A stretch of DNA of 50,777 bases from NCBI GenBank assembly GCA_023334545.1, contig JAADVB010000132.1, positions 1-50,777 on the forward strand. Reading direction: 5' to 3'. Every line of letters begins with the position of its first letter. Within the stretch, counting starts at the first letter, position 1. This DNA comes from Salisapilia sapeloensis CBS 127946. Lineage: Eukaryota > Protista > Oomycota. Below, piece after piece: positions 33,310-36,996 of this stretch. The translations under genes and the position numbers were made by a program. Below the pieces are notes generated by a model. It had not been told where the DNA came from, made no database searches, and saw nothing but the letters and a program-made list of their open reading frames with translations.

Positions 33310-33807
33310 ATGGGTCCCCCTCCTCCGCCAGGCGAAGAAAAAGTTGTCATCCTGCGAACGGTCGGGGGTGAGGTCGCTCCGGCTTCGGCTCTCGCGCCTA
33401 AGGTCGGTCCGCTCGGTCTGTCGCCGAAGAAAATCGGTGACGACATCTGCAAGGCCACGGGCGACTGGAAGGGCTTGAACGTCACGGTCAAGCTTACCAT
33501 CGTCAACCGTCAGGCGACCGTCTCCGTCATCCCGTCTGCTTCCTCGCTCCTCGTTAAGGAGCTCAAGGAGCCGCCGCGTGACCGCAAGAAGGTGAAGAAC
33601 ATCAAGCACGACGGTAACCTGTCGCTTGACCAGGTCATCGGTGTCGCTCGCATCATGCGCGAACGATCCATGGCCCGATTCCTCTCCGGAACGGTTAAGG
33701 AGATCCTCGGCACGGCCAGCTCCCTAGGCTGCACCGTCGACGGTGAGACGCCGGCTGAGATTCAGCGTCGTATCACCGACGGAGAGCTCGAGATCCCGGA
33801 AGAATAA
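33310..33807 (+). CDS. RPL12: 60S ribosomal protein L12 (uL11)
   Basis: [58 protein letters not shown] and [18 protein letters not shown]. Confidence 0.97.
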
Positions 33808-33995
33808 GCTCAAGGCAAATCAAGTGGTCTTCCGCGCTGCGGACCGATCAAATTCCATTGTTTCTCGTTCATTTTCTTATCTAGTAGGATGCCTGTCGTG
33901 TATGCATGTACTAGGTGAAGGAGAGACGACGTCGTACACATACCAAAGAGAAGAGGAATGAATTAAAGAGTACGATTCAAAGGCACGTCTTCAGC

Positions 33996-35597
33996 CTACC
34001 CAAAGACGATGGACGATGGACCTCCGCCGTAGTTTCGGCTCATGCGCGAGCGAGAGCCTGGAGTCTTGGTCTGTTCGTTTTTCGACTCGGCGCTTCCCGC
34101 CAGACTAACCTTATCCGCATCGATCCCCTGGTTCTTCAGGTTGCTCTTGATCGCCTCCGTGTCGCTGCCCTTGATGTTTAAGTCATCCTTGACCTCCTCA
34201 ACTGTCTGTCTGCCGTCCTCATGCGTCACCAGCACTCGTCTACAAGTGGAGTTCTCGCTCCAGCCTTCGCCTCCGCTGATGTGCCACGCATTCCGGATGA
34301 TCAGCTCAAAGTAGTCGTCGTCGTCGATAGAGGCGCTGATGGTGGCGTAGTACCGGAGGAACTCCCCTGGATAAACCTTGCCATCCTTGTCTCCACCGTC
34401 GAAAGTGTCCAAAAAGTCTGCTAGAACGTCCTCCCGTCTCTTCTTTCCAGCCTTCACGTCCGGATGATTCATAGCAGAGTACTTTTGCTTGAGATCCTCG
34501 ACGTCCACCACCCCGTTCTTGTCTGCATCCAGTCGTTCGAATGCTATCAGAGCCATCTCCTTCCGACGCTCGTTCATCTCTCCTCGCAAAGCAACTAGAA
34601 ACTCGTCGTAGTCGATCTCGCCAGATCCATCGGCATCAATAAACCTGAATAAGTCTTCCACCGCCTACTCCCATGTCCTTGAGATTATTAATTGACTATT
34701 ATATTATAATGTAAAAAGTACCTTGGACGAGAGACCGAGATGATGCTCCTCGATGGCTTTGGAGAACTCGTCCAGGTCCAGTCGACGGTTCCCGTTGTCG
34801 TCGATGATGCGGAACTTGCGGCCGAACGTCGCGACGCTCCTTGCGCCATGTTCGTAAAGCGACTGGCGAACTACTTCCAGCGTCTCTTGGACGTCTGCAG
34901 GGGCGTTAATGATCTTCTCAGGTAGGACGTTGCTCAGCTTCACTGGCTGGTGACTCGATGCCGACTGCCAGTCGCTCAAGCCTCCGAGTCGGATCAGGTC
35001 CTCCAAGTGATCCGCTACGTCCTTACCGTATCCGCTCTTGGCCGTCTGGATGGCACTCGACGAGTCTTCCATCAGCACTTTGCGCACCACTGGCTTCAGT
35101 GTCTGCATGCTGATCTCCATCAGCGACTGCGTCAGACTAGACGCGACGGCCTGGAATACCACGTCATTCGGATCCAACACACCGACGCAGACGACAGCAT
35201 GGAATCCGTTTTCACTGGCGTTGCTCAGAAGCTTGTTAGCAGCATACGGCAGCAAGTCTACGGACGGAACGACGAAAGTCTCATGTGCGAACCCCTTGAG
35301 ATTCTTCAAACAGTTCTCCTCGATTTGGTCCACACAGTCTCCAGGCCCTCCTGCCTTTAAGATTCCGACGCGAAGCTTGGAGGCTGATACTACAGAAGTA
35401 GGTACAGCAGTCGCCACCTCAACCGATGGCTTGGCTACCGGATCTTGAGCTGGGATGGGTGGAGACGCAGGCGCTGGAGCTTGCTTAGGAGCTACTTGGT
35501 CATATCCGAAACTGACATTGGATCCGCCACCAGGGGGTGCCTGTACTCGAGTCGTAGGTCGCTTGAGCGAGAGATCGGAAGAAGTGAGCGTGGACAT
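33996..35597 (-). CDS. Fusion protein: PGG motif - lumazine synthase (RibH)-like domain - calcyphosin-like EF-hand domain - GGG motif; intron 34665-34721
   Basis: RVQAPPGGGSNVSFG. RibH-like VVPSVDLLPYAANKLL, HAVVCVGVL and FQAVASSLTQSLMEISMQTLKPVVRKVL. EF-hands DDNGNRRLDLDEF, DADGSGEIDYDEF, DADKNGVVDVED and DGGDKDGKVYPGEF. Calcyphosin motif YATISASIDDDDYFELIIRNAWH. A canonical 57-nt intron joins the two ORFs in frame. Confidence 0.88.
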
Positions 35598-36996
35598 CTT
35601 GGTCGAAGCAGCCAAATCCAGTTTGATCTCATCTCCTGCTCGTACTTAGTGGCGCCATATGGACACCTGGAATCATAACTGATACATTGGATAGAAACAT
35701 GGCAACTATTTGATCGAGTACGACGAGGTTTTCTGTAAGTATAACTCCTAGAACTTATTCATATTGCTGTCTATGGATATACTTGATCATTCCTTCCTAG
35801 GATCGCCATGTCCACAGCAGAAGTACAAGAGGTAGGATCTATTTCAGTCGACTTTCATATGTATACTAGACTCAGAGAGATAAGTGTCTTTTTGAAGCGA
35901 GCTGATTGCATTTACTATCGATTCTATAAAGAGCTTTCAATCGTCCTTTGTATCTCTCTCGCTACGGGTTTACGATGGGTACCTCTTGAAACGATAGCCA
36001 CTTATGAAAGGCATAGGAAATTGCATCGACTTGATCAGCGCTTTCATTCGGTGCTAGTACGCATCAAGCGTAGCTTGCTTTTCATCCACGATAGAAGGCA
36101 ACGGCATGCAACTGGACAGTCATTTCGACACCTCTTTGATCCAAGAGAGATACAACTTCCGTATCTCTCGTTTCGATTGCCGACGCACGGAATAAATCTG
36201 CAGCAAGTATCAACGGTTGAATAGAGTGAACTCTCCTTATTCCTCAGGCTCTTTCAGTCCAGCTCCTAATTCAACGGTCACATTTGGAGTGCAAGCACAA
36301 CCCACGTCCCAGACGGTTGGGACCTAATTCGAACAATCTACTAGCACTCACACATGCCAGTAGACCGTCCGGACTTTCGACAAGCCAAGTCACTGGAAGA
36401 ATCGACAACTAATACGAACACCAATAATGTAATCACGATCATCCTAAGTGTCATTTCATTTCTACTCACTCGATTCTTTCCAATCCTCTACCCTGCTCCG
36501 TTCTTATCCTAGTAAAGATGCAGGAGATGCACACGCTGACGCATTCGCCTCAAGCACGTGAACGCTTGGCCATGCTTCGAAGAACAAAGTCGATCTAGAA
36601 TCCCAGAACCAGAATCAATGCGGGTAGTTTATTAATAAATCCAGCATAGCACATCGTAATCTCCCAAGACGGACTCGTTTGCTTGTAGCTAAGAGCCATT
36701 CACAGCCTCTTAATGGAGAATCGATGAGTAGAACCCTCTCGACATGCTACGGAAAAGATCGATTCCAACGGAACTGAAGTCAGTAGCGAATTTCGAGCCT
36801 TCCTTCGTTCACGTACGAAAAGGTCTCGTCATGCATTCGGCGTCCGTTTCATCTTTTCGGTCGCGTGGAAATGAAAGGTCGCGAGGTCAAGGGCAGGAAA
36901 AGATTTGCAGCGACCCCTGCGTCCCAGATCTACAACTGCTAGCGAGCTCCCACATCGACGACAAAGAAGGTCGCATTTGGTATCTCTCAGCAGAAC

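What the first reader, a model, noticed from the sequence alone, without database searches (positions are those of the whole stretch)
33996..35597. Lumazine-synthase fold repurposed in a Ca2+-binding, microtubule-motif-bearing protein
Seen: an N-terminal RVQAPPGGGSNVSFG and a C-terminal GGGPSSIVFG bracket a RibH-like domain (~35000-35378) and four EF-hand-like loops with the calcyphosin signature. RibH substrate-binding segments look degenerate: no (F/W)N after the first strand, and DPNDVV where RG.T.H is expected. Known: RibH assembles into pentamers or icosahedra; PGG/GGG-SS motifs occur in SPIRAL1 and Jupiter/HN1 microtubule-associated proteins; calcyphosins are EF-hand proteins. Inference: a pseudoenzyme pentamer displaying multiple Ca2+ sensors and tubulin-binding tails, i.e. 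a candidate Ca2+-switched cytoskeletal or flagellar cross-linker.
Basis: partly seen in the sequence, partly recalled or inferred. Interest (0 to 1): 0.75.

Follow-up and report, generated by a model that had tools for sequence, protein, structure and literature searches.

The report
Dead lumazine-synthase domain in microtubule protein
This oomycete gene encodes a roughly 514-residue protein that joins a catalytically dead copy of a vitamin-B2 enzyme fold to a calcium-binding module and two short end motifs, both of which are known from proteins inside microtubules, so it is most likely an undescribed, lineage-specific microtubule (probably lumen) protein rather than an enzyme.

Summary
On the minus strand, 35597..33996 is one two-exon gene with a 57-nt GT..AG intron at 34721..34665. 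Spliced RNA contigs from this organism and from a roughly 94%-identical relative cover both exons.

The protein has five parts:
- an N-terminal Jupiter/SPIRAL1-type PPGG motif;
- a lumazine-synthase (RibH) fold (Pfam 43 bits; Foldseek hits are all RibH, TM up to 0.8) that has lost the stacking aromatic, the phosphate loop, His88, Arg127 and Lys135;
- a calcyphosin module with four EF-hands;
- a 54-residue extension shared with trypanosomatid DMIP21;
- a C-terminal GGGPSSIVFG motif.

Oomycetes carry a separate canonical RibH, so this domain is a pseudoenzyme. The architecture is conserved across stramenopiles (oomycetes, Tribonema, a brown alga). No paper on it was found.

Calcyphosin modules (CAPSL, RIB22/35/57, DMIP17-23) and the PPGG motif (JPT2) have each been placed in the microtubule lumen. 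A luminal protein is therefore more likely than an external cross-linker. Two aflagellate downy mildews keep the gene intact (dN/dS about 0.1), so it is not flagellum-specific. Pentamer formation, calcium switching and microtubule binding remain untested. The scan had not noted this family on other DNA.

The parts
33996..35597 (-). Whole coding region of the gene (ATG 35597 to TAG 33998-33996), two exons, about 514 aa. RNA contigs reach to about 35629 at the 5' end.
35505..35597 (-). N-terminal Jupiter/SPIRAL1-type motif, aa 1-31 (MSTLTSSDLSLKRPTTRVQAPPGGGSNVSFG).
   Evidence: Invariant core in 37 homologues. The profile finds multi-repeat proteins that pass Pfam JUPITER or are named SPIRAL1-like. 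The only PDB matches are CRMP1-5 tails.
35376..35504 (-). Pro/Ala-rich linker, aa 32-74, predicted disordered.
   Evidence: pLDDT 43-56. Variable in length and sequence among homologues. dN/dS 0.6 in downy mildews.
34983..35375 (-). Lumazine-synthase (RibH) fold domain, aa 75-205, catalytically degenerate.
   Evidence: Pfam DMRL_synthase 43 bits. AlphaFold2 pLDDT 80-96. Foldseek hits essentially all RibH. Catalytic positions lost.
34722..34898 (-). First part of the calcyphosin module, aa 234-292 of exon 1, with the EF1 loop at 34767-34802.
   Evidence: Aligns to CAPSL 24-72 and calcyphosin 17-65.
34665..34721 (-). Intron, 57 nt, GT..AG, AT-rich, with in-frame stop codons.
   Evidence: Skipped by one contig in each of 4 RNA assemblies. 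Sequence.
34281..34664 (-). Rest of the calcyphosin module, exon 2 aa 1-128. EF2 is at 34602-34637, EF3 at 34494-34529 and the 13-residue EF4 loop at 34362-34400.
   Evidence: CAPSL 11yj E 1.7e-34, RIB22 5e-31, calcyphosin 3e3r 3e-28. Loops located.
34119..34280 (-). Conserved 54-aa extension (ISGGEGW..CRRVLVTH.DG.QTVEEVK..).
   Evidence: Near-invariant across stramenopile homologues. Matches the same segment of trypanosomatid doublet-microtubule inner protein DMIP21 (9e78_3D, E 4e-12) and 9e2g_0T (E 3e-14).
33999..34118 (-). Disordered tail ending in the C-terminal motif ..SRNYGGGPSSIVFG (motif at 33999-34040).
   Evidence: The C-terminal (S/T)(S/N/T)(I/L)(V/I/T)(F/L)G is conserved in the full-length homologues whose C-terminus is complete; Bremia P0049 and P0055 depart. 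Tribonema has PGGKSNLVLG. dN/dS 0.05 for tail plus motif.

Best explanation
The gene encodes a non-enzymatic, calcium-binding microtubule protein specific to stramenopiles, and it most likely resides in the microtubule lumen.

It is built like a Jupiter/SPIRAL1-type two-motif protein, with one PPGG-type tubulin-binding motif at each end. Two modules sit between the motifs:
- a lumazine-synthase-fold domain that has lost its substrate-binding and catalytic residues;
- a calcyphosin-type four-EF-hand module with a 54-residue extension.

Proposed mechanism (inferred): the calcyphosin module docks on the inner face of tubulin, as CAPSL, RIB22/35/57 and DMIP21 do, with its EF-hands facing the lumen. 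The terminal motifs add flexible contacts to tubulin, as proposed for JPT2. The dead RibH domain acts as a structural spacer or oligomerisation hub.

The protein is not flagellum-specific. It probably also, or mainly, serves cytoplasmic and spindle singlet microtubules.

Shown here: gene structure and splicing, fold, loss of the active site, homologies, taxonomic spread, a separate canonical RibH, and retention in aflagellates. Inferred: microtubule binding, luminal site, Ca2+ binding and the role of the RibH domain.
For: - One spliced mRNA is seen in two organisms.
- The RibH fold is supported with confidence.
- The Phe22/Trp27, Thr86, His88, Arg127 and Lys135 equivalents are replaced in the window by G, D or V, V, T or A, and D or Y.
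- The same oomycete species carry a canonical roughly 215-aa RibH with all motifs. Examples are P. belbahrii P0209, Bremia P0219, Saprolegnia P0239 and Albugo P0234.
- The best solved relatives of exon 2 are all microtubule inner proteins: CAPSL, Tetrahymena RIB22/RIB57/RIB35/CFAP161A, and trypanosomatid DMIP17/18/20/21/23 (PMC7617938).
- CAPSL binds luminal alpha-tubulin 1:1, also in vitro on singlet microtubules (bioRxiv 10.64898/2026.06.11.731632).
- The end motifs belong to the Jupiter/SPIRAL1 motif family.
- JPT2 is luminal and needs its PPGG motifs for microtubule localisation (PMC12773733).
- The same motif ends the microtubule-tethering tail of CRMPs (PMC5587665).
- Small stramenopile proteins with the same MSTLTS.D..R.(S/T)T..HAPPGG start and a second motif at the C-terminus exist, for example Epipyxis P0148. 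This fits an insertion into a two-motif ancestor.
- The architecture is conserved in Saprolegnia, Bremia, Phytophthora, Tribonema, Choristocarpus and environmental sequences.
- Aflagellate downy mildews keep intact syntenic copies. dN/dS is 0.11 overall, 0.10 for the RibH-like domain and 0.07 for calcyphosin.
Against: - There is no localisation or binding data for any member of the family.
- The window's N-terminal piece does not itself reach Pfam JUPITER. The link is transitive.
- In JPT2 the repeat without Lys (PPGG-x-S, as here: PPGGGS) was not sufficient for microtubule localisation. The oomycete C-terminal motif has lost PP and K (GGGPSS / GAGASS).
- The luminal placement of JPT2 rests on one study, and its pocket model is an AlphaFold3 prediction.
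- Calcyphosin itself was first known as a soluble signalling protein.
- If the RibH domain still forms pentamers, a particle of roughly 280 kDa would have to enter or co-assemble into a 15-17 nm lumen.
- dS between the two downy mildews is saturated (about 1.6), so the dN/dS values are rough.
Confidence: 0.5

Rival explanations
1. First reader's model. The RibH-like domain forms a pentamer that displays five Ca2+ sensors and ten tubulin-binding tails on the outside of microtubules. It acts as a Ca2+-switched cross-linker or bundler of cytoskeletal or flagellar microtubules.
For: - The RibH fold is retained with high confidence, and real RibH proteins are pentamers or multiples of pentamers (established knowledge).
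- CRMP2, an oligomeric pseudoenzyme, tethers to the microtubule lattice through a tail ending in the same motif.
- SPIRAL1 and Jupiter are classically described as lattice-associated MAPs.
- A paralogue with only the motif plus the RibH-like domain exists, which suggests the RibH domain has a role of its own.
Against: - Oligomerisation could not be tested.
- Every solved calcyphosin-type relative sits inside microtubules.
- JPT2 was assigned to the lumen.
- A flagellar restriction is contradicted by retention in aflagellate downy mildews.
- Across ochrophyte members the RibH-like domain is poorly conserved beyond the core.
Confidence: 0.17
2. A soluble Ca2+-signalling adaptor unrelated to microtubules. 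The calcyphosin module senses Ca2+, and the RibH-like domain binds a small ligand (a pterin, flavin or lumazine-like metabolite) or a partner protein. The end motifs are low-complexity tails.
For: - Calcyphosin was first described as a cytosolic Ca2+-binding phosphoprotein (established knowledge).
- The most conserved oomycete segments of the RibH-like domain (LPYAANKL, GFL.., KPVV, GEPRVASVKAKGGWGAEFA) line the former active-site and interface region.
- Retention in aflagellates fits a general cellular role.
Against: - The stacking aromatic, the ribityl contacts and the phosphate loop are all gone.
- Both end motifs are the most strongly conserved parts of the protein. The N-motif is invariant and the tail has dN/dS 0.05.
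- These motifs belong to a motif family tied to microtubules.
- The extension is shared with a structurally resolved axonemal inner protein.
Confidence: 0.15
3. An axoneme-only doublet-microtubule inner protein, the stramenopile counterpart of DMIP21/RIB22. The copies in aflagellate downy mildews would be relics that have not yet decayed.
For: Closest solved relatives are axonemal or transition-zone inner proteins. All named lineages with the full fusion descend from flagellate ancestors.
Against: - Both aflagellate species keep both paralogues intact with conserved motifs and dN/dS about 0.1. By contrast, H. arabidopsidis lost 211 of 257 flagellar genes and all surveyed centriole genes.
- Bremia also keeps a near-complete copy.
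Confidence: 0.12
4. A working lumazine synthase fused to regulatory domains.
For: The Pfam DMRL_synthase score is above the gathering threshold. Several databases name homologues '6,7-dimethyl-8-ribityllumazine synthase'.
Against: - Five of the catalytic and binding positions are lost, and the phosphate-loop Thr aligns to Asp or Val depending on the alignment.
- A canonical RibH is present in the same species.
- An unchecked note reports one on another piece of this genome.
Confidence: 0.02

Closest known systems
Calcyphosin-like protein CAPSL (PDB 11yj) and calcyphosin CAPS (3e3r)
   Same: The four-EF-hand module aligns over its whole length (exon 1 tail to CAPSL 24-72, exon 2 to CAPSL 80-207, E 1.7e-34). 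It has the same loop pattern, including the 13-residue EF4. CAPSL is a luminal alpha-tubulin binder that also decorates singlet microtubules in vitro.
   Different: CAPSL is a stand-alone 208-aa protein. It has no RibH-like domain, no PPGG motifs and no 54-aa extension.
Trypanosomatid DMIP21 (9e78_3D) / 9e2g_0T, and Tetrahymena RIB22, RIB35, RIB57
   Same: These share the calcyphosin-type module. For DMIP21 and 9e2g_0T the following extension (NxWHxSGGxG..CRRxxVxHxxGR..xEVKxDL) is also shared (E 4e-12 to 3e-14). All are resolved inside doublet microtubules (PMC7617938).
   Different: They have other N-terminal parts. Neither the RibH-like profile nor the motif profile hits these chains. They are axonemal with 48-nm periodicity, whereas the present family persists in aflagellates.
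Jupiter / JPT1 / JPT2 (HN1, HN1L) and plant SPIRAL1
   Same: They carry the same short motif (R..APPGG.S..S(F/L)G), placed at both ends of the chain. Relatives retrieved with the family's profile pass Pfam JUPITER or are named SPIRAL1-like. The JPT2 motifs mediate microtubule localisation.
   Different: Those proteins are small, fully disordered and have no folded domains. The window's motifs lack the Lys of PPGGK*S, and the window's N-terminus alone does not reach Pfam JUPITER.
CRMP/DPYSL proteins (for example CRMP2)
   Same: A metabolic-enzyme fold without activity forms the body, and a disordered tail ends in ..R(I/V).APPGGRS.. CRMP1-5 are the only PDB sequences matching the motif profile. 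The tail tethers the oligomer to microtubules.
   Different: The fold is different (dihydropyrimidinase versus RibH). CRMPs are metazoan, have no EF-hands and have one motif per chain. The resemblance is in design, not descent, and the motif match is short (E 0.005-0.4).
Canonical lumazine synthase RibH (EC 2.5.1.78), including the oomycete enzyme (P0094, P0209, P0239)
   Same: Same fold. The ELPYAA segment resembles the eukaryotic-type enzyme.
   Different: The substrate-binding and catalytic residues are lost. The domain is embedded in a roughly 514-aa multidomain protein. The canonical oomycete enzyme is a separate roughly 215-aa protein with a C-terminal hydrophobic tail.

Membership tests
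Lumazine synthase (RibH, Pfam PF00885) | Flavodoxin-like alpha/beta fold of RibH. | tested here: met
   Pfam 43 bits against a 26.7 cut-off. AlphaFold2 pLDDT 80-96. Foldseek top hits are essentially all RibH, target TM 0.7-0.8.
Lumazine synthase (RibH, Pfam PF00885) | Aromatic residue stacking on the pyrimidinedione ring (Phe22 in Aquifex/Bacillus numbering; Trp in fungal and oomycete enzymes, in the (F/W)N segment). | tested here: not met
   The window has KAGGPGD and the oomycete relatives have KT(K/S)(A/S)D, where canonical oomycete RibH has TKWN.
Lumazine synthase (RibH, Pfam PF00885) | Phosphate-binding loop and catalytic His (..(K/R)G.T.H(F/Y)(D/E)..; Thr86, His88). | tested here: not met
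   The window has LDPNDVVFQ and relatives have LN..DPLF. The Thr aligns to Asp or Val and the His to Val or Leu, depending on the alignment.
Lumazine synthase (RibH, Pfam PF00885) | Arg127 and Lys135 contributed by the neighbouring subunit. | tested here: not met
   In the window these are T or A, and D or Y, depending on the alignment. Other oomycetes have Lys at or next to the Arg127 column. Only the Glu138-like acidic residue is kept.
Lumazine synthase (RibH, Pfam PF00885) | Being the organism's riboflavin-pathway enzyme. | tested here: not met
   A separate canonical RibH occurs in the same oomycete species that carry the fusion. An unchecked scan note reports one elsewhere in this genome.
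Lumazine synthase (RibH, Pfam PF00885) | Pentameric (or higher) assembly. | not testable with these tools
   Only single-chain prediction was available.
Calcyphosin / CAPSL family | Four EF-hands in the calcyphosin arrangement, alignable over the whole protein. | tested here: met
   Exon 1 tail aligns to CAPSL 24-72 and exon 2 to CAPSL 80-207 at E 1.7e-34.
Calcyphosin / CAPSL family | Ca2+-ligating residues in the loops. | tested here: met
   EF1-3 have Asp/Asn/Ser at loop positions 1, 3 and 5 and Glu/Asp at position 12. EF4 is a 13-residue loop, as in calcyphosin. Binding itself was not measured.
Calcyphosin / CAPSL family | Binding to the luminal face of alpha-tubulin. | not testable with these tools
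   Known for CAPSL. Inferred here from homology only.
Jupiter/JPT/SPIRAL1 motif proteins (Pfam PF17054 JUPITER) | Motif R..APPGG.S..S(F/L)G at both the N- and the C-terminus. | tested here: met
   The N-motif is invariant in 37 homologues. The C-motif is conserved in the full-length homologues with a complete C-terminus. The profile retrieves proteins that pass Pfam JUPITER (P0062, 35.7 bits) or are named SPIRAL1-like.
Jupiter/JPT/SPIRAL1 motif proteins (Pfam PF17054 JUPITER) | Direct match of this protein to the Pfam JUPITER model. | tested here: not met
   No hit at E up to 10 for the window's N- or C-terminal pieces.
Jupiter/JPT/SPIRAL1 motif proteins (Pfam PF17054 JUPITER) | PPGGK*S form of the motif, which in JPT2 is the form sufficient for microtubule localisation. 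| tested here: not met
   The window has PPGGGS at the N-terminus and GGGPSS at the C-terminus. Tribonema's C-motif has PGGKS.
Microtubule inner proteins (MIPs) | Physical location in the microtubule lumen. | not testable with these tools
   Inferred from two modules whose relatives are luminal.

The most novel reading that the evidence does not exclude
The dead RibH domain still assembles into a pentamer. The protein would then form a particle of roughly 280 kDa with five calcyphosin modules and ten PPGG-type motifs, of a size that could just span the 15-17 nm microtubule lumen. It would be a defined, lineage-specific 'luminal particle' of ordinary singlet microtubules whose contacts with the wall respond to Ca2+.
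Probability: 0.15. Interest if true: 0.8.

Novelty: new variant of a known kind. Interest (0 to 1): 0.6.

Why it matters
Two modules were only recently placed inside microtubules: calcyphosin-like CAPSL (2026 preprint) and the PPGG motif of JPT2 (late 2025). Here they occur naturally fused in one polypeptide that is conserved across stramenopiles. Such a 'Rosetta-stone' fusion is independent evolutionary evidence that both modules work in the same compartment.

The fusion also offers a tractable protein for studying the lumen of ordinary, non-ciliary microtubules. As far as the searched literature shows, it adds the first case of a lumazine-synthase fold recycled as a non-enzymatic cytoskeletal domain.

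The family is currently mis-annotated in public databases as '6,7-dimethyl-8-ribityllumazine synthase' or simply as an 'EF-hand protein'. It is lineage-specific to a group that includes major plant and fish pathogens, which makes its cell biology worth knowing.

Tried and rejected
- **Pfam on the terminal pieces.** Scans of the isolated N- and C-terminal pieces gave nothing at E up to 10. The Jupiter link had to be made through the family profile.
- **PDB search with a small two-motif relative (P0107).** It gave only a chance hit.
- **AlphaFold2 of exon 2 alone.** The model was poor (mean pLDDT 55), probably because EF1 lies in exon 1 and the alignment had 17 rows. It was not used for fold searching. 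Only its secondary structure for the extension (beta-hairpin plus helix) is noted, at low confidence.
- **Short paralogue next to the gene.** A search as in Peronosporales found none in the 50.8-kb window.
- **Literature searches.** Searches for calcyphosin with lumazine synthase, and calcyphosin with Phytophthora, found nothing. The table of P. infestans flagellar candidates does not list a calcyphosin or lumazine entry.
- **ESM Atlas.** It returned only the family's own, mostly oomycete, cluster.
- **Flavin or lumazine binding.** A chromophore-binding role, as in the riboflavin-binding fungal RibH, was considered and judged unlikely because the stacking aromatic and the ribityl and phosphate contacts are gone.
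- **Organism names.** Organism names for the sequencing runs are coded, and the exact species of the window was not determined. A tree of the exon 2 region places it inside the oomycete clade on a long branch.
Full report
**1. What is in the sequence**

The finding lies on the minus strand. The first ATG at 35597 opens a reading frame that starts MSTLTS. This start is conserved in every homologue.

The frame ends its first exon at 34722 (..HHLGLSSK). A 57-nt AT-rich GT..AG intron (34721..34665) carries in-frame stops. Exon 2 (34664..33999) starts AVEDLFRFIDADGSG and ends ..GGGPSSIVFG before TAG.

Four public assemblies each contain one contig that skips exactly these 57 nt and runs from about 33984 to about 35629. 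Two are from the same organism at 100% identity and two from a relative at about 94%. Nothing lies on 35691-36392 in them, so they are RNA assemblies and the two exons are one mRNA.

Homologues without an intron, for example the single 542-codon ORF of Hyaloperonospora brassicae, run straight through the junction with no residue missing or added.

The two exon products were analysed separately. Natural full-length orthologues were used where the whole chain was needed.

**2. The domains**

*(a) N-terminal motif, aa 1-31.* The sequence is MSTLTSSDLSLKRPTTRVQAPPGGGSNVSFG. Its core is invariant in 37 homologues.

*(b) Linker, aa 32-74.* This Pro/Ala-rich stretch is predicted disordered.

*(c) RibH fold, aa 75-205.*
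- Pfam DMRL_synthase scores 43 bits against a cut-off of 26.7.
- The AlphaFold2 pLDDT is 80-96, with the beta-alpha order of RibH.
- The 50 best Foldseek PDB matches are all lumazine synthases apart from one archaeal riboflavin synthase, with target TM 0.7-0.8.

*(d) Calcyphosin module, aa 234-292 of exon 1 plus aa 1-128 of exon 2.*
- The exon 1 tail aligns to CAPSL residues 24-72 and exon 2 to residues 80-207 (E 1.7e-34).
- It also matches human calcyphosin 3e3r.
- EF1-3 have proper ligand positions. EF4 is a 13-residue loop, as in calcyphosin.

*(e) Extension, 54 aa.* The segment ISGGEGW..CRRVLVTH.DG.QTVEEVK.. is almost invariant across the family. It is shared with trypanosomatid DMIP21 and 9e2g_0T (E 4e-12 and 3e-14).

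*(f) Tail.* A disordered tail ends in GGGPSSIVFG.

**3. The RibH domain is a pseudoenzyme**

The family profile was aligned to the Aquifex enzyme (chain numbering from HMMER). The domain was also aligned to canonical RibH proteins, including those of oomycetes.

| Canonical feature | Window | Other oomycete family members |
|---|---|---|
| Stacking aromatic (Phe22; Trp in TKWN of oomycete RibH) | Gly | Ala/Ser/Thr |
| VPG(A/S)(F/Y)ELP | VPSVDLLP | - |
| LIKGETxHF (phosphate-loop Thr86, catalytic His88) | LDPNDVVF (Thr to Asp or Val, His to Val) | LN..DPLF |
| Arg127 | Thr or Ala | Lys at or next to the column |
| Lys135 | Asp or Tyr | - |
| Glu138-like acidic residue | kept | kept |

The residue numbering and roles are established knowledge of the enzyme. 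The papers found with these terms were not read.

Oomycetes possess a separate canonical RibH of about 215 aa with all motifs. It occurs in the same species that carry the fusion: Peronospora belbahrii P0209, Bremia P0219, Saprolegnia parasitica P0239, Albugo laibachii P0234 and Globisporangium ultimum P0218.

An earlier, unchecked scan note reports a 'lumazine synthase with a C-terminal tail anchor and two Cys-Pro motifs' on another piece of this genome. The canonical oomycete enzymes aligned here indeed end in such a tail.

**4. Relatives and distribution**

A word search with exon 1 found the family throughout oomycetes at about 40% identity. The entries were named variously 'calcyphosin-like', 'EF-hand protein' or 'lumazine synthase'.

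A profile search of 1.84 billion representatives gave 880 hits. The full architecture (motif, RibH-like, calcyphosin, extension, motif) occurs in:
- Saprolegnia (545 aa), Bremia and Phytophthora;
- the xanthophyte Tribonema (510-519 aa);
- a partial model from the brown alga Choristocarpus;
- several environmental sequences.

A tree of the exon 2 region puts the window's protein inside a 100/100-supported oomycete clade, on a long branch.

Peronosporales also have a tandem short paralogue with the motif plus the RibH-like domain only (217-220 aa). The synteny there is Zip, short, long, RPL12. The window has only the long gene, next to RPL12.

The Albugo models have motif, RibH-like and motif without calcyphosin.

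No paper mentioning this family was found.

**5. The end motifs**

The same profile search retrieved many proteins that consist only of repeats of ..(D/E)R(P/S)(S/T)TRVHAPPGG.S..(S/T)(F/L)G.
- One of these (P0062) passes Pfam JUPITER at 35.7 bits against a cut-off of 27.
- A word search from another (P0090) lists proteins that JGI names 'SPIRAL1-like' and others with a precomputed JUPITER domain.
- Small stramenopile proteins, for example Epipyxis P0148 (94 aa), begin MSTL(T/M)S.D... like the present family and carry a second motif at their C-terminus. This suggests that the RibH-like and calcyphosin modules were inserted into a two-motif ancestor.

A motif-only profile searched against all PDB sequences hit nothing but the extreme C-terminal tails of CRMP1-5, for example KRASARILAPPGGRSS (E 0.005-0.4). 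CRMP2 is an oligomeric dihydropyrimidinase-fold protein that needs this tail to sit on microtubules (PMC5587665).

**6. Where and how it probably works**

Every solved relative of the calcyphosin module is a microtubule inner protein:
- CAPSL lines the lumen of transition-zone doublets. Recombinant CAPSL binds luminal alpha-tubulin 1:1 on singlet microtubules, with its EF-hands pointing away from tubulin (bioRxiv 10.64898/2026.06.11.731632).
- Tetrahymena RIB22, RIB35, RIB57 and CFAP161A are inner proteins.
- So are trypanosomatid DMIP17, 18, 20, 21 and 23 (PMC7617938).

JPT2 was reported as a resident of the lumen of singlet microtubules. Its PPGG motifs are needed for microtubule localisation, and it is displaced by taxanes (PMC12773733).

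Two independent modules of this one protein therefore point to the inner face of microtubules. That is the basis for the preferred explanation.

Caveats:
- The window's motifs are the Lys-less kind, which in JPT2 was not sufficient alone.
- The oomycete C-motif has lost the prolines.
- The link to Pfam JUPITER is transitive.
- No member of the family has been localised.

**7. Not flagellum-specific**

Hyaloperonospora and Peronospora form no zoospores. H. arabidopsidis has lost 211 of 257 flagellar genes and all centriole genes surveyed (PMC3471859).

Yet H. brassicae and P. belbahrii keep both paralogues intact and syntenic. The pairwise values are:

| Region or gene | dN/dS |
|---|---|
| Long gene, overall | 0.11 |
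| RibH-like domain | 0.10 |
| Calcyphosin module | 0.07 |
| Extension | 0.08 |
| Tail plus C-motif | 0.05 |
| First linker | 0.6 |
| RPL12 (comparison) | 0.04 |

dS is saturated, so the values are approximate. This argues for a role on cytoplasmic or spindle microtubules, possibly in addition to axonemes.

**8. What remains open**

Still untested are whether the RibH-like domain oligomerises, whether Ca2+ changes anything, and whether the protein binds tubulin at all. Only single-chain prediction was available.

Its 'flagellar' qualifier is contradicted.

**9. Verdict**

The gene belongs to an undescribed, stramenopile-wide family best read as a composite microtubule (probably luminal) protein with a dead lumazine-synthase domain. 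It is a new variant of known kinds (calcyphosin-type inner proteins, Jupiter/SPIRAL1 motif proteins, pseudoenzyme scaffolds).

Noticed in passing
P0209, P0219, P0239, P0234, P0218 (canonical oomycete RibH; not in the window): The canonical oomycete lumazine synthase carries a C-terminal extension of about 55 aa, with two Cys-Pro motifs (GC-PMR.., ..CPFF) followed by a hydrophobic tail-anchor-like helix. Capsaspora and Hondaea RibH lack it. This matches an earlier scan note on another piece of this genome.
   Followed up: partly
L001:4001-4654 and L002:4001-4663 (Hyaloperonospora brassicae, Peronospora belbahrii): A tandem short paralogue (217-220 aa: N-terminal PPGG motif plus RibH-like domain, no calcyphosin, no C-motif) lies directly upstream of the long gene. 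It is under purifying selection (dN/dS 0.13). It is absent from the window.
   Followed up: partly
P0038, P0035 (Albugo), P0025, P0040: A third architecture has N-motif, RibH-like domain, linker and C-motif (..KRKQYGAGESSVVFG) without the calcyphosin module. Whether these are true genes or exon-skipping gene models was not checked.
   Followed up: no
P0095 (1147 aa), P0101 (Papus ankaliazontas, 1291 aa), P0081, P0185 (Balamuthia): RibBA (DHBP synthase / GTP cyclohydrolase II) is fused to one RibH domain (P0081, P0185) or to several RibH-like domains in a row (P0095, P0101). In P0095 some of the repeats look degenerate.
   Followed up: no
P0131, P0141, P0134: This is another divergent RibH-like group. 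It lacks the (F/W)N segment and has altered His-loop motifs. P0131 and P0141 have Cys-rich C-terminal tails (CxC repeats). Their origin is unknown.
   Followed up: no
window 33310-33996: RPL12 (33310-33807, + strand) and this gene converge with only 188 bp between their stop codons. One RNA contig of run X1 runs unbroken across both genes, so the 3' ends of the two transcripts probably overlap. The library is not known to be stranded.
   Followed up: no
window 35691-36392: No RNA contig of any of the four runs lies here, although a 138-codon ORF (35808-36224, + strand) is present. It is probably not a gene, or it is silent in these samples.
   Followed up: no
P0049 (Bremia lactucae, 563 aa): The Bremia model departs from the family after the extension and lacks the C-terminal motif. 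This is either a mis-annotated intron or a real change in this mostly aflagellate species.
   Followed up: no
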